The translations under genes were made by a program, and so were the position numbers. Positions 15,407 to 54,431 of a stretch of DNA of 64,000 bases are shown one piece after another. Positions within the stretch are counted from its first letter, which is position 1, and each line of letters starts with the position of its first letter. The stretch is from positions 62,001 through 126,000 of the IMG/VR virus record IMGVR_UViG_3300009103_000001. One strand, written 5' to 3'. The notes beneath the pieces were generated by a model, which worked only from the letters and a program-made list of their open reading frames with translations, was not told the DNA's origin and ran no database searches.

Positions 15407-15488
15407 CATCACACCAACTAATTAATATTTAATATATCATAATTAAACATTTAATAGTATCTTAGATATTTATTAATAAAACAATATT

Positions 15489-16634: not shown

Positions 16635-16649
16635 AAAAATTATTAATAG

Positions 16650-21245: not shown

Positions 21246-22109
21246 ATGGCGAATAAAAGAATAGACCAATTACCAAAAAATACTAACGCGTTAAAAGACT
21301 CGGATTTAATACCTATATGGGATGTTGTTAATAGTAAAACTGAAAGTGTATCTTTAGGTTCTTTATCTAGTTTTATAGATACGGCAACATTTACTGGTAA
21401 TACAGAAGCTACTTGTATATCTAATTTATATGTTAGTAATCTTTTCCCTTGTTCACCATTAACAATTTACGGTAATGTTGTTATACCTTCAGGTATAACG
21501 GTAGGTGGTACCATTACATGGTCTGGTGGTAGTGGACATAGTGGTCACGGAGTGACCATTACACCACAAGGTATTACCATAACTGGTAGTACAAGTGGTG
21601 GTACAGGTACAACAAGTACTACAATAACAAGTAGTGGTATTAATACACCTGGTTTAACTACACCTAATATATCTACGTCAGGTATAACAGTAGGTGGTAC
21701 CATTACATGGTCTGGTGGTAGTGGACATAGTGGTCACGGAGTGACCATTACACCACAAGGTATGTCAATAACTAGTAGTGGTAGCACTATAATAATTTCT
21801 AACTCAGGTATATTAAATAATACTAGATTTTTAGGTAATACTGGTGGTACTATAACTATAAATGATTATTTTATAATAATTAACGGAAATGGTAGTCCAA
21901 CATGGACACTACCTAATTCACCTAATAATGGTAAAGAATTTTTATTTCGTAGAAACGATACAAATATAGGTACTTGCACTATTCAAACTTCTGGTAGTGA
22001 TGAAATTTTAGAATTAAATACTGGTACAGTTAGTACATCTATAACATTAATAAATGGTGAATCAAAAAAAGTTATTTACCATGATGCCATATGGTATGAA
22101 GTAATATAA
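21246..22109 (+). CDS. Fibre-like virion protein with internal duplication
   Basis: MANKRIDQLP N-terminus; C-x11-CSP module; duplicated 28-aa segment; C-terminal TLPNSPNNGKEFLF fibre-type domain. Confidence 0.8.
   Translation: MANKRIDQLPKNTNALKDSDLIPIWDVVNSKTESVSLGSLSSFIDTATFTGNTEATCISNLYVSNLFPCSPLTIYGNVVIPSGITVGGTITWSGGSGHSGHGVTITPQGITITGSTSGGTGTTSTTITSSGINTPGLTTPNISTSGITVGGTITWSGGSGHSGHGVTITPQGMSITSSGSTIIISNSGILNNTRFLGNTGGTITINDYFIIINGNGSPTWTLPNSPNNGKEFLFRRNDTNIGTCTIQTSGSDEILELNTGTVSTSITLINGESKKVIYHDAIWYEVI
21489..21763 (+). repeat. Two 86-bp direct repeats (21489-21574, 21678-21763) with one mismatch
   Basis: tcaggtataac(g/a)gtaggtggtaccattacatggtctggtggtagtggacatagtggtcacggagtgaccattacaccacaaggtat. 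Confidence 0.9.
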
Positions 22110-35697: not shown

Positions 35698-37575
35698 ATG
35701 GAAGAAAATAAAAATTTAACAGTTTATCAAAAATTATTTTACTTATTTGGACAAGCGGGTGGACCGAAAACGAATGCGGATTATAATAAGTATACTTTAA
35801 ATAATAAGGATTTAATTGTTACTAAATCTAAAGAAGATTTTCAAAAAGAAAAATTACAACTACAACAACAAAAATATTTAGAAGGTCAATGGGCCAGAGT
35901 TGATAGTGAATTATACCAAAAATCAATATTTTATGAAACATCTAGAGTGGCTTCATATATGGATTATGAATCTATGGAGTTTACACCTGAAATATCAGTA
36001 GCTTTAGATATAATGTCTGAAGAAAGTTGTACGTTAAGTGAACAAGGACAAATATTATCTATTTATTCTGATTCTTCTAGAATCAAAAAAGTTTTACAAG
36101 ATTTATTTTATAATGTATTAGATATACACTCTAATTTACCTATGTGGACAAGAAATACTTGTAAATATGGTGATAATTTTGTTTTTCTAAAAATAGATTA
36201 TAAAGATGGTATTATAGGGGCAAGTCAATTAACAAATATAGAAGTTAGTAGAAGTGAAACAGGAACATTCCCATTCCAAGAACCAACGGTACAAGAAGCT
36301 GAAAATGACGTTAAAAAGAAACAAGTTAAATTTTATTGGAAAAATAAAAATATGGAATTTAATCCATGGGAAGTAGCACATTTTAGATTATTAGGTGATG
36401 ATAGAAAATTACCTTATGGTACTTCTGTGTTAGAAAAAGTTAGAAGAATATGGAAACAACTTCTTTTAGCTGAAGATGCTATGTTAGTTTATCGTGTTAC
36501 AAGAGCACCAGAAAGAAGAGTATTTAAAGTTTATGTTGGTAATATAGATGATGATGATGTTGAAGCTTATGTACAAAAAGTAGCGAATAAATTTAAAAGA
36601 GTACAAACAACAGATAATCAAACTGGTCAGGTAGATATTAGATATAATACTTTAGCCGTAGACCAAGATTATTTTGTTCCTGTAAGAGACCCAAATGCGT
36701 CAATGCCTATTGAGACTTTAGCTGGAGCTCAAAACTTAGACCAAATTGCTGATATACAATTTATACAAAGAAAATTAGTTACAGCACTAAGAGTACCTAA
36801 AACTTTTTTAGGTTTTGAAGAACCTGTTGGTGAAGGTAAAAATTTAGCTTTGATGGACATTAGATTCGCTAGAACTATTAATAGAATTCAACAAGCTATG
36901 ATACAAGAATTAAATAAAATAGCTATTATACATCTATATATTTTAGGGTTTCATGATGAATTAAATGATTTTAAATTATCACTTAATAACCCATCAACAC
37001 AGGGTGAGATGTTAAAGGTTGAACAATGGAAAGAAAAAGTTCTTTTATATAAAGATTTAGTTGCCGGAGTTGATGGTGGTATAGCGCCAACATCACACAC
37101 ATGGGCTAAGAAAAATATATTTAATTGGTCTTCAGATGAAATAAAAGAAGATTTAGAACAACAAAGACTAGAGAGAGCGGCTTCAGCGGAATTAGAACAA
37201 ACACCGAACATAATTAAAAATACTGGATTTTTTAAGAAGGTTGATAAACTATATGGAGAATTACCGATGGACCAAGGTGAAGAGACTGAAGAAGGCGAAG
37301 GTACTGAAGAAGGTTTTGGTGGTGGTGATTTAGGTGGAGGCTTTGGAGGTGGAGGCTTCGGAGGCGGTGAAGATTTCGGTGGTGGTGAAGAAGGTGGCTT
37401 TGGTGAAGAAGGTGGCTTTGGTGAAGAAGGTGGCTTTGGTGAAAGTTTTAGGGGAGACGAAAAAACTATAGAGAAGTTACTATTAGAAGGTAAGAAAAAA
37501 AATGAAGATATTTTTATGATGACAGAGGGTATTGAAGACCTTATAAACAAGAATAAAGATACAGAACAAGAATAA
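35698..37575 (+). CDS. Portal protein (T4 gp20-like)
   Basis: EDAMLVYRVTRAPERRVFKVYVGN, DYFVPVR, IETLAG and ALRVPK motifs. Confidence 0.95.
   Translation: MEENKNLTVYQKLFYLFGQAGGPKTNADYNKYTLNNKDLIVTKSKEDFQKEKLQLQQQKYLEGQWARVDSELYQKSIFYETSRVASYMDYESMEFTPEISVALDIMSEESCTLSEQGQILSIYSDSSRIKKVLQDLFYNVLDIHSNLPMWTRNTCKYGDNFVFLKIDYKDGIIGASQLTNIEVSRSETGTFPFQEPTVQEAENDVKKKQVKFYWKNKNMEFNPWEVAHFRLLGDDRKLPYGTSVLEKVRRIWKQLLLAEDAMLVYRVTRAPERRVFKVYVGNIDDDDVEAYVQKVANKFKRVQTTDNQTGQVDIRYNTLAVDQDYFVPVRDPNASMPIETLAGAQNLDQIADIQFIQRKLVTALRVPKTFLGFEEPVGEGKNLALMDIRFARTINRIQQAMIQELNKIAIIHLYILGFHDELNDFKLSLNNPSTQGEMLKVEQWKEKVLLYKDLVAGVDGGIAPTSHTWAKKNIFNWSSDEIKEDLEQQRLERAASAELEQTPNIIKNTGFFKKVDKLYGELPMDQGEETEEGEGTEEGFGGGDLGGGFGGGGFGGGEDFGGGEEGGFGEEGGFGEEGGFGESFRGDEKTIEKLLLEGKKKNEDIFMMTEGIEDLINKNKDTEQE
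37387..37443 (+). repeat. Three tandem 18-bp repeats (GAAGAAGGTGGCTTTGGT) in the portal C-terminal tail
   Basis: Encodes (EEGGFG)x3. Confidence 0.85.
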
Positions 37576-39329: not shown

Positions 39330-40460
39330 ATGAAAAAAGTTTTTTTAGAATACGTTTGGTTGGACGGAAATCAACCACAACAATTAAGAAGTAAAACTAA
39401 AGTTGTAAAACCTGAAGATATTAGAAAATATACTGATTCGGGGGTTATAAACCCCGAATATTCGGGATTTATTTGGGATTTACCTAAATGGTCTTTTGAT
39501 GGTAGTTCAACAAAACAGGCTAAAGCTGGAAAGGGGGAAAACACTGATTGTGTTTTAAAACCTGTATTTTCTTGTGATGACCCATTTAGAGGTGATTATC
39601 ATTACATTGTCCTTTGTGAGGTTTTAAATCCAGACGGAACCTTACACCCAACAAATAAAAGAGGTGAGTTAAGGGAGTTTATGGAAAAAAATAAAATAAC
39701 GGACTCTAAAGTTAGTTTAGAAAAAGCCAATTGGTTTGGTTGGGAACAAGAATATACTTTAACCACAAAACCGAATTTTAAAGAAGGTGAAGGATTACCA
39801 CTTGGGTTCAGACCTAATGAAGAACCTAGACCACAAGGAGATTATTATTGTGGTGTTGGAGCAGATAATATCACAGGTAGAAGAATTGTGGAAGAACATT
39901 TAGAAAAATGTGTTGAAGCTGGTTTGGATATCTCAGGTATTAACGCGGAAGTTATGTTAGGGCAATGGGAATACCAAATTGGACCTGTAACATCTCTTGA
40001 AGGGTCGGACCAATTATGGGTTTCTAGATATATTCTACAACGAGTGGCCGAAGAAAATGGTGTTAAAATATCATTTCACCCAAAACCAAAAACTGGTGAT
40101 TGGAATGGTTCAGGATGTCATGTCAATTTCTCAACCCCTGAAATGAGAAAAGAAGACGGTATTAAATTAATTAAAGATACAATGGCTAAATTAACACTTA
40201 CTCATGATGAACATATTAAAGTATATGGTTTATATAATGAAAAACGTATGACAGGTGAACATGAAACTTCTAGTATAAACGATTTTAGTTATGGTTATAG
40301 TACAAGAGATACTAGTATCAGAATTCCAGCACAGTCAATAATTGATGGTAAGGGTTATTTTGAAGACCGAAGACCCGCTTCTAATTGTGACCCATACAGT
40401 GTAGCATTACGTATGTTAAAAACTGTATATAACACTGTGAATGAAACAGTAGAAGTTTAA
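39330..40460 (+). CDS. glnII: Glutamine synthetase type II
   Basis: EYVWLDG, LRSKTK, WSFDGSST, EQEY, NAEVMLGQWEYQIGP, DWNGSGCH, SIRIP and YFEDRRPASNCDPY. Confidence 0.95.
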   Translation: MKKVFLEYVWLDGNQPQQLRSKTKVVKPEDIRKYTDSGVINPEYSGFIWDLPKWSFDGSSTKQAKAGKGENTDCVLKPVFSCDDPFRGDYHYIVLCEVLNPDGTLHPTNKRGELREFMEKNKITDSKVSLEKANWFGWEQEYTLTTKPNFKEGEGLPLGFRPNEEPRPQGDYYCGVGADNITGRRIVEEHLEKCVEAGLDISGINAEVMLGQWEYQIGPVTSLEGSDQLWVSRYILQRVAEENGVKISFHPKPKTGDWNGSGCHVNFSTPEMRKEDGIKLIKDTMAKLTLTHDEHIKVYGLYNEKRMTGEHETSSINDFSYGYSTRDTSIRIPAQSIIDGKGYFEDRRPASNCDPYSVALRMLKTVYNTVNETVEV

Positions 40461-42172: not shown

Positions 42173-42213
42173 AGTAATAAATGTTTTAAGTGATTTTTAA
42201 ATAATTAATTGAA

Positions 42214-42243
42214 CAAATATAATAATATTATTTTTATTGGCAA
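42214..42243 (-). promoter_or_regulatory. Bacteroidota-type promoter TTG-N19-TATATTTG
   Basis: Consensus match upstream of 42172. Confidence 0.6.
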
Positions 42244-42289
42244 TGGAATAAGTGAATTTATTGCATATTTATTAAGAAAAGTATTAAAT

Positions 42290-43018
42290 ATGAAAATATT
42301 AAAACCAGGAGATGAGGGATATGGTTATATCATTGAGTATGATGCCGGATTTATTTCACCATCATTAACATGTAAAGACGGTGTGTGTTCTAATTCTAAT
42401 TTGATTAAAGAATTTAAATCTGGTTTAAATTTCGGATTAGATGGGGAGTTACCAGATAAAATAGAATTATACGCTGTTCTTCAAAAATGGGGTGTGGAGA
42501 ATAAAAATGGTAGAGTATATACAGAAGAAATTTTAAAAAGAGAGGCAAAAAGATACCAAGAATTTATAGATATGGGTACATCACTCGGTGAATTGAATCA
42601 CCCAGAATCATCAATTATTGATGCTGACCGTGTATCACATAGAGTTACAGAAATATGGTGGGAAGGTAGAACATTAATGGGCAAAATCGAATTAGACACA
42701 ACACCAGGTTATTTAAGTGGTGGTGTGATTAGTTCTGTTGGTGATAAAGTTCTTAATATGATTAGAAAGGGATGGACTGTTGGCATATCTTCTAGAGGTG
42801 TCGGTTCGTTAAAACAAGAAGGTGGTAAAAATGTTGTTCAAGACGATTTCGAATTAATATGTTGGGATATTGTAACATCACCATCTACACCAGGTTCTTG
42901 GATATCGATAAGTCAACAAGATTTGACACCATATACAGAATCAGTTAAAAAAAATAATAATTTATTATCCGAAGAAGAACATACATTATTGAATAATTTA
43001 AATAAATTTTTATTATGA
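42290..43018 (+). CDS. Prohead core protein protease (T4 gp21-like)
   Basis: NKNGRVY, LGELNHP, VSH, GISSRGVGS and DIVTSPSTPGS; start moved to ATG 42290 after CATATTTATT at 42264. Confidence 0.92.
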   Translation: MKILKPGDEGYGYIIEYDAGFISPSLTCKDGVCSNSNLIKEFKSGLNFGLDGELPDKIELYAVLQKWGVENKNGRVYTEEILKREAKRYQEFIDMGTSLGELNHPESSIIDADRVSHRVTEIWWEGRTLMGKIELDTTPGYLSGGVISSVGDKVLNMIRKGWTVGISSRGVGSLKQEGGKNVVQDDFELICWDIVTSPSTPGSWISISQQDLTPYTESVKKNNNLLSEEEHTLLNNLNKFLL

Positions 43019-43296
43019 AAAAAATAATTAAATTAAACGAAAACGATATAGGGAACTTGGTTAAGAAAATAATCAAGGAAGATAGAACTGATTTTGAAAA
43101 AGTTTATATAATAGTTAATAGAGAAATACACGGTTATGAGGCGGTAGAGAATGTATATAAGACGTTGGAAGATGCGGTAAAAGATGATGTATTTGACAGA
43201 TACGAACAAACGCCAGAAATACTAAACGACCCAAATGATGGGGGGTTATATGGTATGAGTGAAACATTTTATATATTACCTTATAAAGTAAATTAA
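43015..43296 (+). CDS. Leader-A cargo protein (MKKIIKLNENDIGNLVKKIIKE)
   Basis: Leader shared with six other ORFs. Confidence 0.8.
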   Translation: MKKIIKLNENDIGNLVKKIIKEDRTDFEKVYIIVNREIHGYEAVENVYKTLEDAVKDDVFDRYEQTPEILNDPNDGGLYGMSETFYILPYKVN

Positions 43297-43313: not shown

Positions 43314-43634
43314 ATGAAAAGAATTGAAAAACAAAAGAGACGGTTAATTGAAGAAGCTAATAAAAGGGTTCTAAAGGAATCCGCTGAATTGACTGAATTA
43401 CACGATGATGTATTATACTTAACACCTGAATACCGTTTGACTGGTAATAGGGGTGAGGGTGTTCGTGTTTATGAAGAAATAATGGATACTGTTAATTCAT
43501 ATGGTATAGAACCATCTGATGAGGCTAAAGCTTTAATTAAAAGACTTGAATACGACCTTAGTGCTTTAGAGGGTTTCGATGAAAGAGTGGTAAAATTATA
43601 TGAATCTTTAAGTGGAATAAATATTAATGAATAA
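43314..43634 (+). CDS. Leader-C cargo protein (MKRIEKQKRRLIEEANKRVLKE)
   Basis: Leader related to those of 54431 and 54613. Confidence 0.8.
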   Translation: MKRIEKQKRRLIEEANKRVLKESAELTELHDDVLYLTPEYRLTGNRGEGVRVYEEIMDTVNSYGIEPSDEAKALIKRLEYDLSALEGFDERVVKLYESLSGININE

Positions 43635-43641
43635 AATAATT

Positions 43642-43980
43642 ATGAAAAAAATAATTAAATTAAACGAAAACGATATAGAAAATTTGGTTAAGAAAATAAT
43701 CAAGGAAGAGGGTGAAGAGTATAGAAGTAAAGACCCAGACCAATTGGATATGTTTGATGGCACAGTTAAAGATAGGGAATTAGAACAAGAATATAAAGAA
43801 TGGGAAGAAGAGGATGATAAAATGACAGATATATATAATGATATTTATGACACACTTGAACCGGTATTGAATAATATTCTTGATAAGTATGGAGAAGATT
43901 TTGATTTAATCGCCAATGATGACATGATTCAAAACATAGTAGAGGATTGGATGTATCCAGATGGAGGTGATGAAGATTAA
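43642..43980 (+). CDS. Leader-A acidic cargo protein
   Basis: Start moved to ATG 43642 at the leader. Confidence 0.8.
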   Translation: MKKIIKLNENDIENLVKKIIKEEGEEYRSKDPDQLDMFDGTVKDRELEQEYKEWEEEDDKMTDIYNDIYDTLEPVLNNILDKYGEDFDLIANDDMIQNIVEDWMYPDGGDED

Positions 43981-44010: not shown

Positions 44011-45156
44011 ATGAAAAAAATAATTAAATTAAACGAAAACGATATAGAGAATTTAGTTAAAAAAATAATCAAGGAAGATAGGTTACAAGAATTAGATAAA
44101 TTAACTTATGATAGTGCAGCTGAAAAAGCTTCAGAAAGAGGTATACCCGCTTTATCTGATAGATTTAGAAAACATGGACAAGAACATGGTCTAGGAAAGG
44201 AAAAAGAACAATTCACTTTAGTGATTGACCATAGCAGTCTTGGAGAAAGGGAATATACTTATAAAGTTGAGTCTGTGGAGGAAATGGAAGATGGTAAAAC
44301 TTTAAAAATAAAATTAGTTGACATAGATAACCCACAAAATGTTCATACATATACAGGAAGTATTCGACTCACCAACCCAAACAAAAACAGTAGGTCACTT
44401 AAACGTGGGGATTATAAACTAATTTTATATTTTAGAGATAATTATTATACTTTAGCTAAAACAAGAAAAGATGCTAAAAATTTATTAAATATGTTAATTA
44501 AAAATATGGGTGGTAAACACATGTTCCACCCACTAAAAAATATAGACCCTAGAACTTTAACTCTTGGGTATTCAAATTTTGGTGAAAATATTAAAAGAAG
44601 AAAAACACTTAGTGAAGATAGAACTGATTATGAGATGAGTGGTGCTAGAAGTCGTAAAGACTATGTCTCTAATCCAAGAGAAAGAGATATTACTGGAATG
44701 TTCGGTAAATATTCTGAAGATGTACCACCAATGGTAATTAGATACATGAGAAAAAATCCTGAAGCTATTGTAAAAAGATTATATAAAATATATGGTGATA
44801 AAATATATGATTATATACCACAACAAGTAGATATGGATTTAGTTAGAAATAACCCGAATGATGCCGATTTAGGGGCACAAGTTAGAAGTCGTTTTAATTC
44901 TGAAAATATTAATGAATGTGGTGAAGGGGGTTATATGACAGAAGATGGTTGTGTTGATTATGTCGAGGAAAATAGAAGACCTAGAAGAATATCTGAATCA
45001 AACGGTAAAGGTTGTGCTGATACAGAAAAAGGTTGTATTAGAAAAAGAAAAAGTGGTTGGGTAATATTAAATAATAAAAAAGGTGGTGTTTGGAGAAAAT
45101 GTTCTAGTAGAAAAAACTGTGAAGAACAATTAGATGCATATCACGCAAATCAATAA
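44011..45156 (+). CDS. Leader-A multi-module protein
   Basis: ATATTTAT at 43991; internal LQE, LSE, INE and ISE sites separate modules. Confidence 0.85.
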   Translation: MKKIIKLNENDIENLVKKIIKEDRLQELDKLTYDSAAEKASERGIPALSDRFRKHGQEHGLGKEKEQFTLVIDHSSLGEREYTYKVESVEEMEDGKTLKIKLVDIDNPQNVHTYTGSIRLTNPNKNSRSLKRGDYKLILYFRDNYYTLAKTRKDAKNLLNMLIKNMGGKHMFHPLKNIDPRTLTLGYSNFGENIKRRKTLSEDRTDYEMSGARSRKDYVSNPRERDITGMFGKYSEDVPPMVIRYMRKNPEAIVKRLYKIYGDKIYDYIPQQVDMDLVRNNPNDADLGAQVRSRFNSENINECGEGGYMTEDGCVDYVEENRRPRRISESNGKGCADTEKGCIRKRKSGWVILNNKKGGVWRKCSSRKNCEEQLDAYHANQ

Positions 45157-45158
45157 TC

Positions 45159-45464
45159 ATGAAAGTTAAAAATATGTTATACGCGGGTCTTGGTATGGGT
45201 ACAATGGTATCTAAGAAGACTTATGAAGCTTATGAAAATTTTGTAAAAAGTGGTAAGGAGTTGGACCCAACAGTAAGTTCTACTATTGATGATTTTTTTA
45301 GTGATTTGGAAAATCAAAAAAAAGAAGTTAGAAATAGAGTTGAGGAAATTTTTAGTTTAACAGCGGATAAATTAGGGTACATCAAATTAAATGAGTATGA
45401 AAATTTATTAAAAAGAATAAAAACTTTAGAAGCTGAGTTAGCACAAGAAAAAAATAAAAAATGA
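45159..45464 (+). CDS. Phasin-like coiled-coil protein
   Basis: LYAGLGMG...FVKSGK...LLKRIKTLE resembles PhaF/PhaI-like phasin family proteins. Confidence 0.55.
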   Translation: MKVKNMLYAGLGMGTMVSKKTYEAYENFVKSGKELDPTVSSTIDDFFSDLENQKKEVRNRVEEIFSLTADKLGYIKLNEYENLLKRIKTLEAELAQEKNKK

Positions 45465-45805
45465 AAAAAAGAATTGTAAAACTAAACGAAAACGATATTG
45501 AAAGACTCGTTAATAGAATTATAAAAGAAGATGAAAAAGTATCATCTTCACAACTTAAACAAAAAATGAAACAAACTAGTATGGATACTGGTAGTTTAGG
45601 TTTAACACCAAAAGAAAGAGAAGTCTTTAGTACAGCAATAGATATGTTAAAAGATTTTTTCGCACAACAAGGAAATCAGGCAACAGGTAAAGCTTTAAGT
45701 TTATTTAATAGATTTAAGGATAGTTTAAAAGATGTTAAAGCTGAACCAATTAAATCACCAGAAGAGGAACAAAATACTGGTACAGATGAATTCGCGGACC
45801 AATAA
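45461..45805 (+). CDS. Leader-A cargo protein (MKKRIVKLNENDIERLVNRIIKE)
   Basis: Shared leader. Confidence 0.8.
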   Translation: MKKRIVKLNENDIERLVNRIIKEDEKVSSSQLKQKMKQTSMDTGSLGLTPKEREVFSTAIDMLKDFFAQQGNQATGKALSLFNRFKDSLKDVKAEPIKSPEEEQNTGTDEFADQ

Positions 45806-46376: not shown

Positions 46377-46610
46377 ATGAGTGATATAATAGTAAAATAT
46401 TTTTTAGTAAAAGTAGAATTTGATTCTATAAATGAGAACACGGGAAAACCAAAGAAAATAAAAACACAATATCTTGTTGATGCAATGACTTGTACAGAAG
46501 CTGAAGCAAGAACAAACATTTATTTAAAAGAATCTGTGTTAGACTATGAGATTGTATCGGCAGTTAAAAGTCCAATAGAAGACGTTATAAGAGTAGCGGT
46601 TCCGGCTTAG
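46377..46610 (+). CDS. DUF4494-like protein
   Basis: YLVDAMTCTEAEAR motif, a family typical of Bacteroidota. Confidence 0.7.
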   Translation: MSDIIVKYFLVKVEFDSINENTGKPKKIKTQYLVDAMTCTEAEARTNIYLKESVLDYEIVSAVKSPIEDVIRVAVPA

Positions 46611-46823: not shown

Positions 46824-48029
46824 ATGGCAGAGAACAGAAAGTCTATCATCGATGAGGCTCTCTTAGAAAGCGAACAAATTGAAAAAGCTTTCGAAGCTAA
46901 TGCAAAAGAAATACTGACTCAAACTATGAGTTCAGAAATTGAAGAAATGGTAAAGGAATCTTTAGAAGGTTCAAGTAGCTTAACAGAAGACGAAGATGAA
47001 GAAATGTTAGATTTACCTGATATGGGTGATGATGACGAAGATGCCGTCGCTGTTGCTGGTGACGTAGAAGACCTAGAAGACATGGGAATGGAACTAGGCG
47101 ACCTTGAAGGTCTAGAAGACCTTGAAGGGGATGATAACGAAGGACTTGATATCGAAATGATTGATTTGACAGACGCTGACGACACTGAAGTTGTTAGAGT
47201 TTTCAAAAAAATGGGACCAGACGATGAAATCGAAGTGGTTCAAGATGGTGGAAATATTGATATTAAGGATAATGAAACTGGCGCAGAATATAGAGTAGAA
47301 CTTGGTGGTGAAGGTGAAGACCTTGAAGACCTTGAAGGTGATGAAATTGAAATGGAAGACTTAGAAGACGTAGACGTTGAAGGTGATGAAATTGAAATGG
47401 AAGACCTAGAAGGTGATGACACTGAAGGTGAAGAAATTATTTATCAAGTAGAACTTGATGATGAAGATGACACCGTTGAAGAAGCTAGCAGAACATTAGG
47501 TAAGGGAAGTAAAAACTACCCTAAACGTAAAGGTTTACCAAAACCTATAGCTAGTGGAGCTAAGAATGAGTCAATAAAACCAAAGTTCTTAAAAATGATG
47601 AATGAAAATAAAGTTCTAAAAACTGATATCGAAAAAGTTGAATCTGAAAATAAAGAGTTAAAAGAAGACTATAATAAAATGGTTGACGCTCTTAAACAGT
47701 TCAGACAAAAACTTAATGAGGTTGCTGTGTTTAACAGTAACTTAACTTATACAGTTAGATTATTTACCGAACACTCAACTACTAAAGATGAGAAAGTTGA
47801 TGTAATCAAGAGATTTGATGAAGCTAAAACTCTTAAAGAATCTAAAGCTACTTATAAAAATTTAGTTAAAGAAATATCTAAGACAAAGGCTCCAATTAAA
47901 GAATCTATTGAGGAAAAAATTAACGAAACAAAATCTAGTGGTTCAGCACAGGTAACTGAATCTAAAGTTTATGTACACCCAGAGTTAGAAAAAATGAAAA
48001 ACTTATGGGAATATGAGTACAAAAACTAA
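46824..48029 (+). CDS. Prohead scaffolding/core protein (T4 gp22 position)
   Basis: Acidic low-complexity middle, C-terminal coiled coil, many LxE sites; immediately upstream of the major capsid gene. Confidence 0.8.
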   Translation: MAENRKSIIDEALLESEQIEKAFEANAKEILTQTMSSEIEEMVKESLEGSSSLTEDEDEEMLDLPDMGDDDEDAVAVAGDVEDLEDMGMELGDLEGLEDLEGDDNEGLDIEMIDLTDADDTEVVRVFKKMGPDDEIEVVQDGGNIDIKDNETGAEYRVELGGEGEDLEDLEGDEIEMEDLEDVDVEGDEIEMEDLEGDDTEGEEIIYQVELDDEDDTVEEASRTLGKGSKNYPKRKGLPKPIASGAKNESIKPKFLKMMNENKVLKTDIEKVESENKELKEDYNKMVDALKQFRQKLNEVAVFNSNLTYTVRLFTEHSTTKDEKVDVIKRFDEAKTLKESKATYKNLVKEISKTKAPIKESIEEKINETKSSGSAQVTESKVYVHPELEKMKNLWEYEYKN

Positions 48030-48064: not shown

Positions 48065-49888
48065 ATGGGATATTTATTAAAATCTGGTGAGGTTGGAAAT
48101 ATCGGACTTAAGCATCAAAAAGCTATCCGTGAAGCAACCGTAAACAAGTGGAATGACCTAGGATTTCTTGAAGGTTTAGATGGGCATGTTAAAGAAAACA
48201 TCGCTCTTCTTTACGAGAACCAAGCGTCAACACTTATTAATGAGACAACAGATACGGCTGGTGGAGCATCAACTGGTTCTTTTGAAACAGTAGTTTTTCC
48301 AATCGTAAGGCGTGTTTTCTCAAAATTGTTAGCAAACGACATCGTTTCTGTTCAAGCATTAAATTTACCAATAGGTAAACTTTTCTATTTCGTACCAAAA
48401 GTATCGGATAGAGTTGAGAGTACATCTCCATCTTTTGCTGGTGGAGCATCTGGTGCTACTGCATCACATGGAGCACCAATAATCTGTCACTGTAACACAA
48501 CAGACTGTAATCCTACGACTTACTCTGAATGTGCTAAAAATATGTATGATAGATTTTATGATGACGGAATGTGGGACCAATCAAAAGGTCAAATAATGTT
48601 ACACGTTGATAACGGTACTATGGTAGTGTTTACTGCTTGTACTGACGCAACACTTGGTGTTCCTCATGAATTCATTGGTGGTGTTACTGCACAAGCTGGT
48701 GACGGTTCTGTTAGAAGTCAAATTGTACAAATTTGTAACTTTAGTACAGCTGGAGCTGGTAGACTTTTAGGTCCTGATGGAAATGAAATGGATACTGAAT
48801 CTTTCTTAGCATCAATTGCTGTTACACCTACTGGTACTTTAGTTGATAAAGATGGTTTAACAATTGCTGAGGCTGGTGACCAATTACCAGTTAGAGTTGT
48901 TACACAAAAATATGGTAGAGGTATCGTTTCTTATGGTGATATTTGTGACGCTGAAGGATGTATATTCTTAGAAGTTGATTTAACTCACCCAGTATGTGTA
49001 GAATGTGGTGATGGTACTTTCGATGGTTATATCGGAGCAGCATCTGGAACAACAGCTATTGTATCTGGTGTAGGTTCTAGTGACTTAGGAGGTGTAAACC
49101 TAGCAGTTACTTGGAGGTCTTACCAAGACCTTGAAGAAGAGTGTGAAATGGGAGAAGTATCTTTCGAACTTGATTCTGTTACAGTATCGGTTACTGAAAG
49201 AAAATTAAGAGCTACTTGGACTCCTGAATTAGCACAAGATGTGTCAGCGTTCCATAACATTGATGCAGAAGCTGAATTAACAGCATTACTTTCTGAACAA
49301 GTTGCAGCAGAAATCGACAGGGAAATCCTTAGAGATTTAAGAACTGGGGCGGCTTGGACATTAAGATGGGATTATAACGGATGGAAAAGGTTACCAAATA
49401 ACAACGGTTACACTCAAAAAGATTGGAACCAAACGTTGATTACAGCGGTTAACCAAATTTCAGCTCAAATCCATAAGTCTACTCTTAGGGGTGGTGCTAA
49501 CTTCGTAGTTGTATCTTCTGAGGTATCAGCCATTATGGATGACCTTGAATACTTCCACGTATCTAACGCAGCTCCAGAACAAGACCAATACAATATGGGT
49601 ATTGAAAGAGCTGGTTCTCTTGGTGGACGTTACACTGTATACCGTGACCCTTACGCTCCAGCACACTCGGTGTTAGTTGGACACAAAGGTAAATCACTAT
49701 TGGATACTGGGTATATTTACGCTCCGTATGTACCATTACAGTTAACTCCAACAATGTACAATCCATTTAACTTTGTACCTATCAAAGGTATAATGACGCG
49801 TTACGCGAAAAAGATGGTTAATAACAGGTTCTACGGACATATCCGTGTGGACGGTTTACGTACATTTGATGTTAGAGAATTGAGATAA
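48065..49888 (+). CDS. Major capsid protein (T4 gp23-like) with Cys-rich insertion
   Basis: PIVRRVF..LLANDIVSVQ, RKLRATWTPELAQD, EIDREI, YAPYVPLQ and GIMTRY. Confidence 0.95.
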   Translation: MGYLLKSGEVGNIGLKHQKAIREATVNKWNDLGFLEGLDGHVKENIALLYENQASTLINETTDTAGGASTGSFETVVFPIVRRVFSKLLANDIVSVQALNLPIGKLFYFVPKVSDRVESTSPSFAGGASGATASHGAPIICHCNTTDCNPTTYSECAKNMYDRFYDDGMWDQSKGQIMLHVDNGTMVVFTACTDATLGVPHEFIGGVTAQAGDGSVRSQIVQICNFSTAGAGRLLGPDGNEMDTESFLASIAVTPTGTLVDKDGLTIAEAGDQLPVRVVTQKYGRGIVSYGDICDAEGCIFLEVDLTHPVCVECGDGTFDGYIGAASGTTAIVSGVGSSDLGGVNLAVTWRSYQDLEEECEMGEVSFELDSVTVSVTERKLRATWTPELAQDVSAFHNIDAEAELTALLSEQVAAEIDREILRDLRTGAAWTLRWDYNGWKRLPNNNGYTQKDWNQTLITAVNQISAQIHKSTLRGGANFVVVSSEVSAIMDDLEYFHVSNAAPEQDQYNMGIERAGSLGGRYTVYRDPYAPAHSVLVGHKGKSLLDTGYIYAPYVPLQLTPTMYNPFNFVPIKGIMTRYAKKMVNNRFYGHIRVDGLRTFDVRELR

Positions 49889-49972: not shown

Positions 49973-50140
49973 ATGCCGTATAAAGTAAAAGGTAAATGTG
50001 TTTATAATGCCAATACTGATGAGAAAGTAGGTTGTACTAAGGGTTCAGTCAAAAAATATCTTGCCGCATTAAATGCTAATGTGGATGAAAATATTATTAA
50101 AAAAGTTGTACAGGAAACCTTTAAAAGGGTTGGCATTTAA
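49973..50140 (+). CDS. Small basic Cys-containing late protein (55 aa)
   Basis: MPYKVKGKCVYNANTDEKVGCTKGSVKKYLAALNANVDENIIKKVVQETFKRVGI*; TATTTATA at 49952; missed by the ORF track. Confidence 0.7.
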   Translation: MPYKVKGKCVYNANTDEKVGCTKGSVKKYLAALNANVDENIIKKVVQETFKRVGI

Positions 50141-50368: not shown

Positions 50369-50803
50369 ATGAAAATTAAAAAAATCATAAAAACTATTTT
50401 GGAATCAGAATTTGACTGGGTTAAAGATTCTGTTTTACATTTTTGGGATATGAATAAAAAATATGTTGTGGATGTTTCAAAGTTAGAAAGATACCCACCA
50501 ATGAGTCTTTCACCAACTTCTGATAGGTATACAGATATATTTATATCAGATATTATAGATTATGGTAAAGAAATAGGGTATGATATAACGGATTTAGGTA
50601 GTACAGCTGATATACAACAACGAGTGCAAGGTTCTTATACCGTTCCTCATGATGTATGTTATATATATTTTAATCCAAACAAATTTGTAGAGTGGGATAT
50701 GTGTGGTATAGACGACCCAACTTGGGATGGTGAATATGAGTTAATGGATGCGGAGAGTTTTATTTATTATATGGAGAATAATTTTATTAAGAATGAACAT
50801 TAA
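50369..50803 (+). CDS. Leader-B cargo protein (MKIKKIIKTILESEFDW)
   Basis: GATATTTATA at 50347. Confidence 0.8.
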   Translation: MKIKKIIKTILESEFDWVKDSVLHFWDMNKKYVVDVSKLERYPPMSLSPTSDRYTDIFISDIIDYGKEIGYDITDLGSTADIQQRVQGSYTVPHDVCYIYFNPNKFVEWDMCGIDDPTWDGEYELMDAESFIYYMENNFIKNEH

Positions 50804-51842
50804 AAAAATTATAAGAGAAGAGTTGGACGATTTTGATTGGGCTAGGGATGATATCTACTTTTCAATAGACTATATTCTAGGTAAACAGATGTATTTTAGG
50901 CATAGTAATATAAATGAACTTGAAAGAGAATATAAAGCTTATAACAATGACAGAATACAACAAATACCAAAAAATAAAATAGTCTTAGGTAATATTAAGT
51001 GGACTAGTATGTTTACGGCAAATTATGTTAAAAATAATATAGCACACATCTATTTACAAGACAGCACTAGTTTACAATATTCAGTGGATATGGTTGAATT
51101 TTATGTAAATAGTGGTATATGGGCTTTAGAGGATGATAATGGTAATATTATTAATGATTTCTCTGGCCAATATTTAAAAGAATCAGAGTTGGATTGGATT
51201 CAAAAATCTGAACCAGATAGAAAAGATATTAGAAGTTTCAATAAAGAAAGGTATAAAACCACTCTTAATTATAATAATGCTGAAATAGGGGATAAATTTA
51301 TCCCACCTGGTAGTCATATGGTATGGACCGTTGATGATAAAGAATTTTGGCGTGGCAAATGGGGTAATGACGAAAATGGAGACCCTGAATATTATAGATA
51401 TTTTATTATATGGATAAAAAATGAGAGGGGTGACCTCAAAAGAAAGTATTATAATAAAACGAATAAATTATTTCCAGGTACTTATAGACCTTGGAGAAAA
51501 ATAGTTGACTCTAATATTAATGAATCGAAAGAGTTTGATTGGGCAAAAGAAATTAAACCTGAAATGACTGCTGAAGCTGTACCACTATATTATAATAAAC
51601 CTCTTTTTTGGTATCATCGGGGTGAACCTAGGCAATGTTGGGGGATGCCTACCATTTATTGGTTATCAAAAAGTTATGTCACTGAAAGGGGTGAAAATAT
51701 ATCTTTATTATGTTATGATGACGGATGTGATGTAGAATCAAAAATTGAATGTAGTGCATTTTATGACTATACAATTGCTAATATGTTTAATGAGGGGACA
51801 CTTAGATTTCAATCACAGTTAAGTGATATTGAACCAACTTAA
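50793..51842 (+). CDS. Putative three-module polyprotein (MNIKKIIREELDDFDW; LKESELDW; INESKEFDW)
   Basis: Start moved to ATG 50793; internal linkers at 51174 and 51516. Confidence 0.8.
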   Translation: MNIKKIIREELDDFDWARDDIYFSIDYILGKQMYFRHSNINELEREYKAYNNDRIQQIPKNKIVLGNIKWTSMFTANYVKNNIAHIYLQDSTSLQYSVDMVEFYVNSGIWALEDDNGNIINDFSGQYLKESELDWIQKSEPDRKDIRSFNKERYKTTLNYNNAEIGDKFIPPGSHMVWTVDDKEFWRGKWGNDENGDPEYYRYFIIWIKNERGDLKRKYYNKTNKLFPGTYRPWRKIVDSNINESKEFDWAKEIKPEMTAEAVPLYYNKPLFWYHRGEPRQCWGMPTIYWLSKSYVTERGENISLLCYDDGCDVESKIECSAFYDYTIANMFNEGTLRFQSQLSDIEPT

Positions 51843-52225: not shown

Positions 52226-52256
52226 AAAAAAAAAGGGAAGATTACTTCCCTTTTTT
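52226..52256. terminator. Intrinsic terminator (bidirectional type)
   Basis: aaaaaagggaag-atta-cttcccttttt. Confidence 0.75.
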
Positions 52257-52421
52257 ATAAACATCTAAATAAGATACCCCATATTTTCTGAGTTTCTCAC
52301 CCAAAGTGGCGTCATGAGGGTTTTCCTTGATTTCTTTAATAAAATGTTCTATAACATCCGAATAAAGTAAAACCAGTTCGTCTATATTAGATGTCGACCT
52401 TATTTTTTCTTTAAACGTCAT
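52242..52421 (-). CDS. Small protein with P-x-D-x-x-L-G-x-x-x-R motif (59 aa)
   Basis: MTFKEKIRSTSNIDELVLLYSDVIEHFIKEIKENPHDATLGEKLRKYGVSYLDVYKKGK*; ATGA-coupled to 52418. Confidence 0.65.
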   Translation of the reverse strand: MTFKEKIRSTSNIDELVLLYSDVIEHFIKEIKENPHDATLGEKLRKYGVSYLDVYKKGK

Positions 52422-53359: not shown

Positions 53360-53764
53360 ATGAAAAAGAAAGTAATTAAATTAAACGAAAACGATATAGA
53401 AAATTTGGTTAAGAAAATAATCAAAGAAGAAGATAAGGAAAAAGTGACAACTTTAACCAGACATCCAGCTTATCCAATTATAGATGAATTGGAAATGACT
53501 TTGGATGAGTTAAAAACAAAATTTAAAAGAGATATCGCAAATAGTGTTTCTGGAGCAGATGGATATCATAGTGAGATAGATACATTCGTGTCAAATTTTA
53601 ATAAATTTATTGGGAAAGTTTCTGATTTGAAAAGTAAGATAAATGACCATCAAATAGCGTCAAAAAAGAAACAAGAGTCAAACGCTCAAATGCAAGAAAG
53701 AAAAAGAGCTCATTGGGATAGAAAAGAAAAAGCTAGAAATGAGGGTAGTAAATACTCATATTAA
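53360..53764 (+). CDS. Leader-A cargo protein
   Basis: MKKKVIKLNENDIENLVKKIIKEE; GATATTTATT at 53333. Confidence 0.85.
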   Translation: MKKKVIKLNENDIENLVKKIIKEEDKEKVTTLTRHPAYPIIDELEMTLDELKTKFKRDIANSVSGADGYHSEIDTFVSNFNKFIGKVSDLKSKINDHQIASKKKQESNAQMQERKRAHWDRKEKARNEGSKYSY

Positions 53765-53777: not shown

Positions 53778-54113
53778 GTGAAAAAGAAAATAATCAAATT
53801 AAACGAAAGTGATATTCAACGTATTGTTAAAAGAATAATAAGTGAAAATAGTGGAATGGATTTTTACTTAGAAGAACTTGGGGAGTTTGCCAATAACTTA
53901 GAATGGAATGATATATATGATGATGATGAGGACCTTAGAGATTATGATGTACATCAAGTAGAGGAAATAATACAACAAGCCAATGATGACGAATCCCTAA
54001 GTGATAATGAGTGGGATATCATTAGTGAATTTGGGCAAGCTATAATTAATAAGTTAACTGGCGAAAGTGGTGAAGAGGATTATCCGACAGACCAGAGAGA
54101 GTATTGGTCATAA
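53778..54113 (+). CDS. Leader-A acidic cargo protein
   Basis: GTG start at 53778: KKKIIKLNESDIQRIVKRIISE. Confidence 0.75.
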   Translation: MKKKIIKLNESDIQRIVKRIISENSGMDFYLEELGEFANNLEWNDIYDDDEDLRDYDVHQVEEIIQQANDDESLSDNEWDIISEFGQAIINKLTGESGEEDYPTDQREYWS

Positions 54114-54134: not shown

Positions 54135-54431
54135 ATGAAAAAGAAAATAATCAAATTAAACGAAAAGGATATCGAAAGATTGGTAGAAAAAATCATTAAA
54201 GAAGAAAATGATATGTTAATGGGTGAAGACTCAGAAGGTGAAGAAACCTATAATTATGACCAAGATTTACATCATGATTCTGAAGAATTACATGATTTAG
54301 AACATAAACATGGTAGTAAAAGACATATCCGTAATTTAAAAAAGGATATGGATTATGATGAAAAAAGAGGTGTAGGTAAAAATGATAAGTGGAGAAGAGA
54401 AAGAGGTACCCACTTTAATAGAAGAAGTTAG
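54135..54431 (+). CDS. Leader-A cargo protein, His/charge-rich
   Basis: MKKKIIKLNEKDIERLVEKIIKEE. Confidence 0.8.
   Translation: MKKKIIKLNEKDIERLVEKIIKEENDMLMGEDSEGEETYNYDQDLHHDSEELHDLEHKHGSKRHIRNLKKDMDYDEKRGVGKNDKWRRERGTHFNRRS

What the first reader, a model, noticed from the sequence alone, without database searches (positions are those of the whole stretch)
44011..45156. Mosaic cargo gene with a visible insertion scar and modules resembling standalone genes elsewhere in the window
Seen: GAAGATAGAACTGATT (EDRTD) occurs at the leader junction of 43015 (43078-43093) and inside this gene (44614-44629), while this gene's own junction reads GAAGATAG. This looks as if a ~180-aa module was inserted between two EDR sites. 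Further on, NPNDADLGAQVR (44851) resembles NPHDATLGEKLR in the small gene 52242-52421. The final Cys/Lys module after ISE (..C..K....C.....LDAYHAN) resembles the small gene 49973 (..KC......K.GC.....YLAALNAN). Inference: polyproteins are assembled by accretion of small genes at Glu-site junctions.
Basis: partly seen in the sequence, partly recalled or inferred. Interest (0 to 1): 0.65.

Follow-up and report, generated by a model that had tools for sequence, protein, structure and literature searches.

The report
Modular capsid-targeted phage head polyprotein
This gene of an uncultured T4-like phage probably encodes a protein packed inside the capsid, built from three portable modules behind a shared 22-residue address tag; each joint looks like a cutting site for the phage's head protease, and each module also occurs as a separate small gene in related phages.

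Summary
The sequence facts are correct. The 16-mer GAAGATAGAACTGATT lies only at 43078 and 44614, and GAAGATAG at 44074.

The window comes from a 210-kb T4-like phage. An S77 prohead protease, a scaffold-like gene and a Gp23 capsid gene surround seven genes that share the leader MKKIIKLNENDIENLVKKIIKE.

Gene 44011-45156 reads leader, modA (aa 28-202), modB (203-302), a small Cys hairpin (303-329) and modC (330-381). Every joint follows an [I/L]xE motif, the cut site of T4 gp21-type proteases, and lies in a predicted disordered linker.

Metagenomic relatives carry leader+modA, leader+modB and modC as free-standing genes. Syntenic relatives include alleles with modA deleted in frame, an internal copy of the leader, and a fusion with the neighbouring gene.

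modules joined at Glu-site junctions is supported.
- **EDRTD:** it is the conserved N-terminus of modB, not a scar in this gene. The chimera is gene 43015.
- **Gene 49973:** the resemblance to modC is weak, though the predicted topology is the same.
- **Gene 52242:** the resemblance is borderline.

This is best read as a new variant of the T4 internal-protein and capsid-targeting-sequence system. Packaging and cleavage are inferred, not shown.

The parts
42290..43018 (+). Prohead protease (Peptidase_S77, T4 gp21 type). The ORF opens at TTG 42209, but relatives start at MKILKPG, which is 42290 here.
   Evidence: Pfam PF03420 E 5e-25. PHROG 207, head maturation protease, E 1e-41. Starts of the relatives are seen.
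43015..43296 (+). Leader gene 1: the 22-aa leader, then DRTDFE (the first six residues of a modB-type module), then unrelated 65-aa cargo. Probably a chimera.
   Evidence: DRTDFE is identical to the modB start of P0007-P0012. No similarity to modB beyond that point.
43078..43093 (+). Copy 1 of the 16-mer GAAGATAGAACTGATT, encoding E|DRTD at the leader junction of 43015.
43639..43980 (+). Leader gene 2: leader plus acidic cargo.
44011..44076 (+). Leader of the focal gene (aa 1-22, MKKIIKLNENDIENLVKKIIKE). Predicted amphipathic helix ending in IKE. Proposed capsid-targeting propeptide.
   Evidence: 52-55 of 57 nt identical to the leaders at 43015, 43639 and 53360, falling to about 11 of 30 right after the Glu codon. 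Helix at residues 9-22. The same leader heads diverse cargo in 21 viral contigs.
44074..44081 (+). GAAGATAG at the focal gene's own leader junction (E22-D23-R24). It ends a 20-nt tract identical to 43066-43085.
44077..44091 (+). Pentapeptide DRLQE between two candidate cut sites (IKE| and LQE|). LQE lines up with the last three leader residues of the free-standing modA genes.
   Evidence: LD[K/R]xTYDSAA is preceded directly by [I/L]xE in 19 of 19 distinct N-terminal contexts.
44092..44616 (+). modA (aa 28-202). Mixed alpha/beta domain, pI 9.5, about 20 kDa, ending in the linker GENIKRRKTLSE.
   Evidence: Alignment A2. Free-standing leader+modA genes P0048-P0065. pLDDT mostly 70-92 (block means, dipping to 56 at residues 121-130), with the linker 188-209 below 50. 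Only 40-49% identical to relatives.
44614..44629 (+). Copy 2 of the 16-mer: E202 of LSE, then DRTD, the start of modB.
44617..44916 (+). modB (aa 203-302). The conserved helical core is aa 203-272 (DRTDYEMSGAR...YGDKIYDYIPQQ). It ends at INE.
   Evidence: 83-91% identical to P0002-P0012. Found directly behind leaders and behind other modules.
44833..44904 (+). Stretch of about 24 aa specific to the window (MDLVRNNPNDADLGAQVRSRFNSE), replaced by IEE in P0002 and L001. It contains the motif compared with ORF 52242.
   Evidence: Low model confidence: block means about 50-59, with residues 274-279 and 294-304 below 50.
44917..44997 (+). Small Cys hairpin segment (aa 303-329, CGEGGYMTEDGC...), lying between INE| and ISE|.
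   Evidence: Conserved in P0002 and L001. Strands at 308-315, and linker 318-334 with pLDDT below 50.
44998..45156 (+). modC (aa 330-381, plus the stop codon). Basic (pI 9.6) beta-beta-beta-alpha mini-domain with four Cys, ending in LDAYHANQ.
   Evidence: pLDDT 72-92 by 10-residue blocks. Found at the C-terminus of many unrelated proteins. 50 clusters of free-standing genes of 51-104 aa.
45461..45805 (+). Leader gene 4. In relative L098 its cargo is fused in frame behind modB.
   Evidence: P0006 against this protein: 56% identity, E 2e-38. The locus is syntenic.
46824..48029 (+). Acidic scaffold-like protein, in the position of T4 gp22.
   Evidence: Position between protease and capsid gene, and composition. 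Conserved in L001, L076, L098 and L099. No Pfam family above threshold.
48065..49888 (+). Major capsid protein (Gp23 family), with a candidate propeptide site LINE|TTDTAGG.
   Evidence: PF07068 E 5e-71. The site reads INE or LSE at the same position in relatives.
49973..50140 (+). Small gene of the MPYKVKGKC...LAALHANVxE|S family. Possible distant relative of modC.
   Evidence: 62 viral loci. hhalign P about 1e-3. Predicted beta-beta-beta-alpha.
52242..52421 (-). Small ORF carrying NPHDATLGEKLR. Its resemblance to aa 254-292 of the focal protein is borderline.
53360..53764 (+). Leader gene 5.
   Evidence: It shares a 52-nt exact repeat with 43652.
53778..54113 (+). Leader gene 6. The leader begins at VKKKIIKLNE, so the likely start is at 53778 rather than ATG 53739.
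54135..54431 (+). Leader gene 7.

Best explanation
Gene 44011-45156 encodes an internal head protein of a T4-like phage, built as a polyprotein.

**Proposed mechanism (inferred).**
- The 22-residue N-terminal leader acts like a T4 capsid-targeting sequence. It takes the protein into the scaffolding core of the prohead.
- The S77 (gp21-type) prohead protease encoded about 1 kb upstream then cuts after Glu in [I/L]xE motifs.
- Cutting removes the leader (IKE22, LQE27) and separates the cargo at LSE202, INE302 and ISE329.
- The products would be modA (about 20 kDa), modB (about 12 kDa), a small Cys hairpin peptide and basic modC (about 6 kDa).
- These stay in the head with the DNA and are probably ejected into the host.

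**Evolution (shown by comparison).**
- The gene is a mosaic. The leader and each module are portable cassettes that occur alone, in other orders and with other partners in related phages.
- Fusions and deletions happen at the leader and cut-site sequences. The near-identical leader DNA and the look-alike junction codons supply the homology for this.
- EDRTD is the conserved start of modB, just after its cut site.
- Gene 43015 carries leader+DRTDFE because it kept the head of a leader-modB gene in front of new cargo.

**Shown:** module boundaries, standalone forms, deletion and fusion alleles, and synteny with the protease, scaffold and capsid genes.

**Inferred:** packaging, cleavage, ejection and what each module does.
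For: **Context.**
- Peptidase_S77 at 42209-43018 and Gp23 at 48065-49888.
- Seven leader genes, all in this head-gene region and nowhere else in the 210-kb genome.
- T4 gp21 cuts after L/I-x-E, and T4 internal proteins carry 10-19-aa capsid-targeting propeptides on otherwise unrelated cargo (PMC9026906; PMC3012670).
- The capsid protein's candidate propeptide site is INE|TT in the window and L076, and LSE|TT in L001, L098 and L099.

**Junctions.**
- modA is preceded directly by [I/L]xE in 19 of 19 distinct contexts.
- modB follows [I/L/M]xE in 21 of 21.
- modC lies 1-3 residues after [I/L/V]xE in 12 of 18.

**Structure model.**
- Residues with pLDDT below 50 fall in four stretches: 188-209, 274-279, 294-304 and 318-334. 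Three of them hold LSE202, INE302 and ISE329.
- The modules themselves are modelled with moderate to high confidence.

**Standalone forms.**
- leader+modA genes of 164-175 aa.
- leader+modB genes P0007, P0010, P0013, P0020 and P0039.
- modC genes of 51-104 aa in 50 clusters. One (P0104) is on 112 contigs.

**Alleles at the syntenic locus.**
- L076/P0003: leader-modA-modB with a different tail.
- L099/P0002: modA, then a full internal leader, then modB-modC, found on 8 contigs.
- L001: the same gene with a 417-nt in-frame deletion in modA and 5 nt of microhomology at the joint.
- L098/P0006: modA lost between the look-alike junctions MKKK-LQE and KRKT-INE. modB is fused to the cargo of the next leader gene, keeping only ..IKE of that leader.

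**Leader DNA.**
- 52-55 of 57 nt are identical among four copies, with the same codon choices.
- Identity drops to background immediately after the Glu codon.

**Leader swapping.**
- In L074 a different shared leader (MKRIIKTFYNFINE|S) heads five tandem genes, including a modA gene that still keeps the tail of the other leader type.
Against: - There is no experimental or proteomic evidence here that the leader targets anything, or that any of these sites is cut.
- The leader has no detectable sequence similarity to T4 capsid-targeting sequences. No Pfam or PHROG family matches the protein.
- [I/L]xE is a short motif. Seven are seen where about 4 are expected in 381 aa, so the case rests on position and conservation, not on count.
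- Six of 18 modC contexts have KME| rather than [I/L/V]xE|.
- The fold searches gave no functional lead for any module: Foldseek best E 0.07, VIA Z at most 5.3.
- No cultured phage carries modB, modC or the 49973 family, so no virion data can be borrowed.
Confidence: 0.7

Rival explanations
1. An ancestral leader-E|DRTD...modB gene received a roughly 180-aa insert (44077-44613) between two EDR sites, and the duplicated GAAGATAG is the scar of that insertion.
For: - Leader-to-modB direct joins are the commonest architecture among relatives.
- 43015 still shows leader-E|DRTDFE.
- GAAGATAG flanks modA, at 44074 and 44614. Only 4 copies lie on the + strand of the window.
- Recombination between the two copies would recreate exactly a P0007-like gene.
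- Natural deletions of modA between look-alike junctions exist (L098).
Against: - LQE|LDK and LSE|DRTD are old junctions. They are shared with P0003-P0005, whose leader junction reads EEK, not EDR.
- 'DR' is only two residues. It lies at the end of a 20-nt tract identical to 43015, so copying of the leader tract between paralogues explains it equally well.
- In the P0002 and P0005 lineage, modA sits upstream of the leader. That fits fusion of neighbouring genes better than insertion.
- modA is 40-49% identical to relatives while modB is 83-91%. This does not indicate a recent insertion from any sampled donor.
Confidence: 0.3
2. The mosaic is real, but the leader is not a capsid address and the junction motifs are not cut. 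The leader would be a shared oligomerisation or regulatory helix, or a conserved translation-start region. The [I/L]xE residues would be structural caps of the modules.
For: - No direct evidence of cleavage or packaging exists.
- There is no similarity to known capsid-targeting sequences.
- The complex prediction of the leader with the scaffold-like protein gave no verdict.
Against: - All seven leader genes lie among the protease, scaffold and capsid genes.
- Every leader ends in I-[K/S]-E, matching the known gp21 specificity.
- The motif is kept at joints whose flanking sequences are unrelated, and at the capsid protein's propeptide site with different residues.
- The leader is conserved at the protein level across contigs that use different codons and carry different cargo. 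This argues against a purely nucleotide-level element.
Confidence: 0.15
3. The resemblances are chance, and the gene is an ordinary single-origin protein.
For: - About 5 exact repeats of 16 nt or more are expected by chance per window.
- The matches to 52242 and 49973 are weak.
Against: - Each module has separate homologues at E values from 1e-17 to 1e-109, in different architectures.
- Deletion and fusion alleles exist in 95-99% identical syntenic DNA.
Confidence: 0.02

Closest known systems
T4 internal proteins IPI, IPII, IPIII and Alt, with their capsid-targeting sequences (CTS)
   Same: - A short N-terminal propeptide is shared by otherwise unrelated, non-conserved proteins of one phage.
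- It ends in an L/I-x-E site for the gp21-type prohead protease.
- The genes are variable between relatives.
- The products are packed in the head and injected (T4 facts from PMC9026906 and PMC3012670).
   Different: - The leader here is 22 aa, against 10-19 aa for the T4 internal proteins. It shows no sequence similarity to T4 CTSs.
- The genes sit inside the head-morphogenesis cluster, next to the protease.
- The cargo is multi-modular with internal candidate cut sites, whereas T4 internal proteins lose only the propeptide.
- Some relatives carry the leader internally (P0002, P0005).
Hypervariable internal-protein loci of T-even phages (Repoila et al. 1994 and Comeau et al. 2007, as cited in PMC2839356)
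   Same: Many cargo variants (more than 30 in T-evens) are exchanged at loci flanked by conserved sequence. Conserved flanks are thought to drive modular swapping.
   Different: - In T-evens the conserved elements described are promoter-like sequences between genes.
- Here the recombining homology is the coding leader and the cut-site codons themselves.
- Swapping also happens within one ORF, giving polyproteins.
T4 core proteins gp22, gp67 and gp68, and the ejection or inner-body proteins of giant phages phiKZ and SPN3US
   Same: They are cut at several Glu sites by a gp21-related protease during head maturation (PMC9026906; PMC5694885).
   Different: - T4 core fragments are mostly expelled as peptides.
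- SPN3US, a phiKZ-related giant phage, has long propeptides of more than 100 aa, and those phages use their own short cleavage motif.
- No homology to any of these proteins was found here.
DUF2188 / DUF6316-like mini-domains (for modC only)
   Same: Atlas structure neighbours of modC include clusters carrying PF09954 and PF19837, with TM by query of 0.57-0.65.
   Different: No Pfam hit for the protein at E up to 0.1. This is a lead only. modC has a Cys-rich N-terminal extension (GKGC-x6-GC).

Membership tests
T4-type internal proteins with a capsid-targeting sequence | Encoded by a phage that has a gp21-type (Peptidase_S77) prohead protease and a Gp23-type capsid protein | tested here: met
   PF03420 E 5e-25 and PF07068 E 5e-71. 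PHROG 207 and 138.
T4-type internal proteins with a capsid-targeting sequence | Short N-terminal propeptide ending in an L/I-x-E cleavage motif | tested here: met
   A 22-aa leader ending in IKE (ISE in one copy) in all seven genes. Motif definition from PMC9026906.
T4-type internal proteins with a capsid-targeting sequence | The same propeptide on otherwise unrelated cargo proteins | tested here: met
   Seven genes in the window. 21 further viral loci with diverse cargo.
T4-type internal proteins with a capsid-targeting sequence | Sequence homology to T4 IPI, IPII, IPIII or Alt, or to their CTS | tested here: not met
   No Pfam or PHROG family matched the 381-aa protein or 43015 at E up to 0.1.
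T4-type internal proteins with a capsid-targeting sequence | Incorporation into the prohead core, removal of the propeptide by the protease, and presence in the virion | not testable with these tools
   Needs virion proteomics or expression experiments. The complex prediction of leader with scaffold gave no verdict.
Protease-processed viral polyprotein | Several independently folding units in one ORF, each also viable as a separate gene product | tested here: met
   Domain and linker pattern of the AF2 model. Free-standing modA, modB and modC genes.
Protease-processed viral polyprotein | Cognate protease sites at every unit boundary | tested here: met
   [I/L]xE at aa 22, 27, 202, 302 and 329, conserved across architectures. 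This is motif presence only; cutting was not tested.
DUF2188-like fold (modC) | Significant match to PF09954 or a solved member | tested here: inconclusive
   No Pfam hit. An Atlas structure row with DUF2188 has TM 0.65 by query and 0.30 by row. PDB searches gave Z at most 4.5 for this part.
49973-type small proteins (MPYK...LAALHAN family), as kin of modC | Significant profile-profile similarity | tested here: inconclusive
   hhalign score 19, P about 1e-3, probability 20-22%. 2 of 200 and 1 of 300 column shuffles reach that score. Same predicted beta-beta-beta-alpha order.

The most novel reading that the evidence does not exclude
Uncultured marine-type T4-like phages may run a combinatorial cargo-cassette system.
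- A portable address tag and minimal protease sites would let them string together, split and swap small injected proteins.
- One tag could load several cargoes that are cut apart inside the prohead, and the tag could even work from an internal position.
- The fast-evolving modules, such as modA, would be a large unexplored pool of injected host-takeover or anti-defence proteins.
Probability: 0.4. Interest if true: 0.7.

Novelty: new variant of a known kind. Interest (0 to 1): 0.55.

Why it matters
- **Evolution of injected proteins.** If the leader is a capsid address and the joints are cut, this shows how phages evolve what they inject with their DNA. They would shuffle small cassettes at the very sequences the head protease recognises, and load several cargoes under one tag.
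- **A way to find candidates.** Searching for leader plus [I/L]xE junctions gives a simple sequence rule for finding injected proteins in metagenomes. These are prime candidates for anti-defence and host-takeover functions.
- **Phage engineering.** The natural variants (long tag, internal tag, multi-cargo) are of interest for T4-style protein packaging.
- **What is already shown.** The evolutionary part (mosaic, standalone forms, deletion and fusion alleles) is established here. The cell-biological part is a clear, testable prediction.

Tried and rejected
- **Family scans.** Pfam and PHROG scans of the 381-aa protein, 43015, 49973 and 52242 gave no usable family.
- **Fold searches.** Foldseek of the AF2 model against the PDB gave a best E of 0.07. 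VIA-align of the whole model and of the 49973 model against 48,161 chains gave Z of at most 5.3 and 3.4, below the noise level the tool states. No function is assigned to modA, modB or modC.
- **Complex prediction.** Leader (aa 1-45) with the scaffold-like protein gave no verdict, score 0.00. It counts neither for nor against binding.
- **Relatives of 52242.** One call failed. The repeat found none in viral contigs, so no profile test of that resemblance was possible.
- **Cultured phages.** tblastn of modB, modC and 49973 against 50,697 GenBank phage records found no match. DNA search of the region found only a 99-nt capsid-gene match to Flavobacterium phages.
- **Paralogues in this genome.** None were found for modA, modB or modC beyond the weak 52242 hit.
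- **Not run.** The large all-protein HMMER search was not used, because no claim here rests on absence of relatives.
- **Rejected readings.**
  - A signal-peptide reading of the leader: it is charged and amphipathic, not hydrophobic.
  - An assembly-chimera explanation: architectures recur on independent contigs, for example P0002 on 8 contigs.
Full report
**1. What the window is.**

The window is bases 62001-126000 of a single 210,157-bp contig with about 30% G+C. Around the finding lies a T4-type head-assembly cluster:
- a Peptidase_S77 prohead protease at 42209-43018 (Pfam E 5e-25; PHROG 'head maturation protease' E 1e-41);
- an acidic scaffold-like protein at 46824-48029;
- a Gp23-family major capsid protein at 48065-49888 (E 5e-71).

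The closest cultured relatives are distant. The best capsid-protein matches are 40-42% identical over about 55% of the protein, to Microcystis phage Mel-JY01, Flavobacterium 'immuto' phages and uncultured huge phages. Several metagenomic contigs are syntenic: L001, L076, L098 and L099.

**2. Checking the observation.**

- GAAGATAGAACTGATT occurs only at 43078 and 44614 in the window, and only twice in the whole genome.
- GAAGATAG is at 44074. Only 4 copies lie on the window's + strand, and 3 of them are at these junctions.
- NPNDADLGAQVR starts at 44851, and NPHDATLGEKLR is in the - strand ORF 52242-52421.
- A 16-nt exact repeat is not rare by itself. About 5 repeats of 16 nt or more are expected in a window of this composition. 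The weight comes from position and from protein-level conservation (sections 4 and 5).

**3. The leader.**

Seven ORFs share MKK(I/V)(I/V)KLNExDIExLVKKIIKE. All seven are in this region, and there are none elsewhere in the genome.
- Four copies are 52-55 of 57 nt identical, with the same codon choices. Identity falls to about 11 of 30 immediately after the Glu codon. One pair shares 52 identical bases in a row.
- The leader is predicted to be a helix, at residues 9-22.
- The same leader heads very different cargo in 21 viral contigs, always ending in [I/L]xE.
- T4 gp21 cuts after L/I-x-E. T4 internal proteins carry 10-19-residue capsid-targeting propeptides on otherwise unrelated proteins (PMC9026906; PMC3012670).
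- The capsid protein here has INE|TTDTAGG at its candidate propeptide site. Relatives have LSE|TTAAAGG at the same place. The motif, not the exact residues, is what is kept.

**4. Anatomy of the focal protein (381 aa).**

| Part | Residues | Ends with |
|---|---|---|
| Leader | 1-22 | ...IKE |
| Pentapeptide DRLQE | 23-27 | LQE |
| modA | 28-202 | ...KRRKTLSE |
| modB (core 203-272) | 203-302 | ...NINE |
| Cys hairpin | 303-329 | ...RRISE |
| modC | 330-381 | C-terminus |

In the AlphaFold model (46-sequence alignment, mean pLDDT 71), the residues with pLDDT below 50 fall in four stretches: 188-209, 274-279, 294-304 and 318-334. Three of these contain LSE202, INE302 and ISE329, and the modules between them are modelled with moderate to high confidence. 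The protein has seven [I/L]xE motifs where about 4 are expected. Only one of them, LGE79, lies inside a folded part.

**5. The modules are separate evolutionary units bounded by Glu sites.**

A word-indexed search found 47 relatives, and mapping them onto the query shows three independent blocks.

- **modA.**
  - It is present in P0002-P0005.
  - A profile of modA finds 164-175-aa free-standing genes that consist of a leader plus modA, for example MKRIIRLTESDLTRLVKKTIME|LDRSTYDSAA....
  - It also occurs behind other N-terminal modules (P0066) and in front of other tails (P0067-P0071).
- **modB.**
  - It occurs directly behind leaders (P0007, P0010, P0013, P0020, P0025-27, P0039).
  - It also occurs behind unrelated N-terminal modules (P0008, P0009, P0012, P0021, P0024, P0028, P0035).
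- **modC.**
  - It ends many unrelated proteins (P0015-P0019, P0022, P0023, P0029-P0031, P0041-P0047).
  - It lies mid-protein in P0016, P0032 and P0033.
  - It also exists as 50 clusters of free-standing small genes of 51-104 aa. Some have a short leader (MKITxSQLRxIIKE|..LxE|) and some are bare. P0104, at 54 aa, is on 112 contigs.

Across all these architectures:
- LD[K/R]xTYDSAA is preceded directly by [I/L]xE in 19 of 19 distinct contexts;
- the modB start follows [I/L/M]xE in 21 of 21;
- GKGC of modC lies 1-3 residues after [I/L/V]xE in 12 of 18. The other six read KME|.

So EDRTD inside the gene is the conserved start of modB after its junction site, not a scar.

**6. Alleles at the same locus.**

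- L076 (P0003) has leader-modA-modB with a different C-terminal module, right after the protease and one other leader gene.
- L099 (P0002, on 8 contigs) has MKKK-LQE|modA, then a complete internal leader, then modB-hairpin-modC in one 380-aa ORF starting at the protease stop. P0005 has the same layout up to modB but a different C-terminal tail.
- L001 is 95-99% identical in DNA to L099 but lacks 417 nt of modA in frame, with 5 nt of microhomology at the joint.
- L098 (P0006) differs in two ways.
  - It has lost modA between the two look-alike junction sequences, MKKK-LQE and KRKT-INE.
  - Its modB is fused in frame to the cargo of the next leader gene, the 45461 type (56% identity, E 2e-38). 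Only '..T-IKE' of that second leader is kept.

P0006 is a direct example of two small leader genes merged at a Glu site.

An inference from the series is that internal leaders decay towards a bare cut site after fusion. The series runs from a full internal leader (P0002), through a leader-tail-like linker (P0067..SNVIKKVIKE|; perhaps GENIKRRKTLSE| here), to a minimal remnant (P0006).

**7. Gene 43015 and the 'scar'.**

43015 reads leader-E|DRTDFE and then cargo with no similarity to modB. DRTDFE is identical to the modB start of P0007-P0012 (INE|DRTDFEMSGAR). The five codons E-D-R-T-D are identical in DNA to 44614-44628. The simplest reading is that 43015 kept the head of a leader-modB gene in front of new cargo.

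The focal gene's own 'EDR' is the end of a 20-nt tract identical to 43015. Two routes fit equally well:
- the leader tract was copied between paralogues.

Both need one illegitimate joint after GAAGATAG. Recombination between the two GAAGATAG copies would give exactly a P0007-type gene.

The modules differ sharply in conservation against the same relatives: modA 40-49%, modB 83-91%, modC 88%. This means either fast evolution of modA or a separate history for it.

**8. The two look-alikes inside the window.**

- **52242.**
  - BLASTP gives E = 1e-4 for the single pair, but 0.042 against all ORFs of the genome. DNA identity over the motif is 24/36.
  - The motif lies in a stretch of about 24 aa (275-298) that P0002 and L001 lack, so a small insertion is plausible.
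  - No relatives of 52242 were found, and the link remains unproven.
- **49973.**
  - BLASTP finds no match to modC. Its best match to the focal protein is, oddly, between its tail (..LNANVDENIIKKVVQE) and the leader (E 0.002 pairwise, 0.13 genome-wide).
  - 49973 belongs to a family found in 62 viral loci: MPYKxKGKCVYKKDTGKKVGCTKGSVKKYLAALHANVxE|S.
  - Profile-profile comparison with the modC family gives score 19, P about 1e-3 and probability 20-22%. 2 of 200 and 1 of 300 column shuffles reach that score.
  - Both are predicted as three strands plus a helix with similar spacing. Both give their weak PDB matches to the same regions of 1pzx_B and 6lvb_B.
  - I rate homology as possible, about even odds, not shown.

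**9. Function.**

No module has a known family or fold.
- modC is basic (pI 9.6) and modA is mildly basic (pI 9.5).
- The Atlas neighbours of modC are small viral hypothetical proteins. DUF2188 and DUF6316 appear among its structural neighbours, which is a lead only.
- By analogy with T4 internal proteins, I propose packaging by the leader, cutting at the Glu sites, residence with the DNA, and ejection into the host.
- All of this is inferred. The complex prediction of the leader with the scaffold-like protein returned no verdict and is not used.

**10. Comparison with what is known.**

The system works like the T4 internal-protein and capsid-targeting-sequence system, and like the variable internal-protein loci of T-even phages. 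It differs in four ways:
- a longer, unrelated leader;
- a location inside the head-gene cluster;
- multi-module cargo with internal junction sites, each module also being a free-standing gene elsewhere;
- relatives with an internal leader.

Multi-site cutting is known for T4 core proteins and for phiKZ and SPN3US head proteins, but no homology to those was found. No cultured phage carries modB, modC or the 49973 family.

**Verdict.**
- A real feature, and a new variant of a known kind.
The details about the 'scar' and the in-window look-alikes are only partly supported.

Noticed in passing
window 49973-50140; loci L050, L062, L064, L066 (ORFs starting near base 3001): The roughly 40-aa 49973-type module (MPYK...LAALHANVxE|S) heads proteins of 45 to 1042 aa in 62 viral loci. 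The longest are polyproteins of 100-150-aa units separated by repeated (I/L)xE|SE(E/D)xF(D/E)W junctions. This is a second, larger case of Glu-site polyproteins.
   Followed up: partly
window 50369-50803 and 50748-51842: These genes carry short leaders (MKIKKIIKTILE|SEFDWVKD; MNIKKIIRE|ELDDFDWARD) and internal LKE|SELDW and INE|SKEFDW junctions, like the polyproteins above. BLASTP found no direct similarity to those polyproteins at 1e-3.
   Followed up: partly
window 39330-40460: A 376-aa ORF whose syntenic counterparts in L076, L098 and L099 are glutamine-synthetase-like (Gln-synt_N and Gln-synt_C). It sits inside the head-gene cluster, between the portal side and the protease. The window ORF itself was not scanned.
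   Followed up: no
L074 5001-9324: Another phage lineage uses a different shared leader (MKRIIKTFYNFINE|S) on five tandem genes. Its modA gene keeps the tail of the other leader type (..SDRQSIME|LDRSTYDSAA), which shows leader replacement.
   Followed up: partly
L099 3001-4143 (P0002); P0005: A complete leader lies in the middle of the ORF, between modA and modB, and the N-terminus is only MKKK-LQE|. If the leader is a capsid address, it would have to work from an internal position here.
   Followed up: partly
window 45159-45464: A 101-aa ORF without a leader lies between the focal gene and leader gene 45461. L001 and L099 have no gene at that place.
   Followed up: no
window 43314-43634: This ORF has a different leader-like start (MKRIEKQKRRLIEEANKRVLKE|). 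Its cargo matches the cargo carried by the standard leader in L001 (5995-6354) and L076 (4617-4982).
   Followed up: no
window 12755-17840; 21501-21763; 29335-29810; 37383-37443: Several repeat families: many copies of a motif encoding ..YSHAEG.. over about 5 kb, a 74-nt exact repeat pair, and short tandem repeats encoding acidic/Gly-rich stretches.
   Followed up: no
window 42209-43018: The protease ORF opens at TTG 42209, but all relatives start at MKILKPG (42290 here). The true start is probably 42290. The C-terminus has LSE|EEHTLL, a possible self-processing site.
   Followed up: no
window 46377-46610: A 77-aa gene is conserved between the leader genes and the scaffold-like gene in all the syntenic relatives. 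It is marked DUF4494 in L076, L098 and L099.
   Followed up: no
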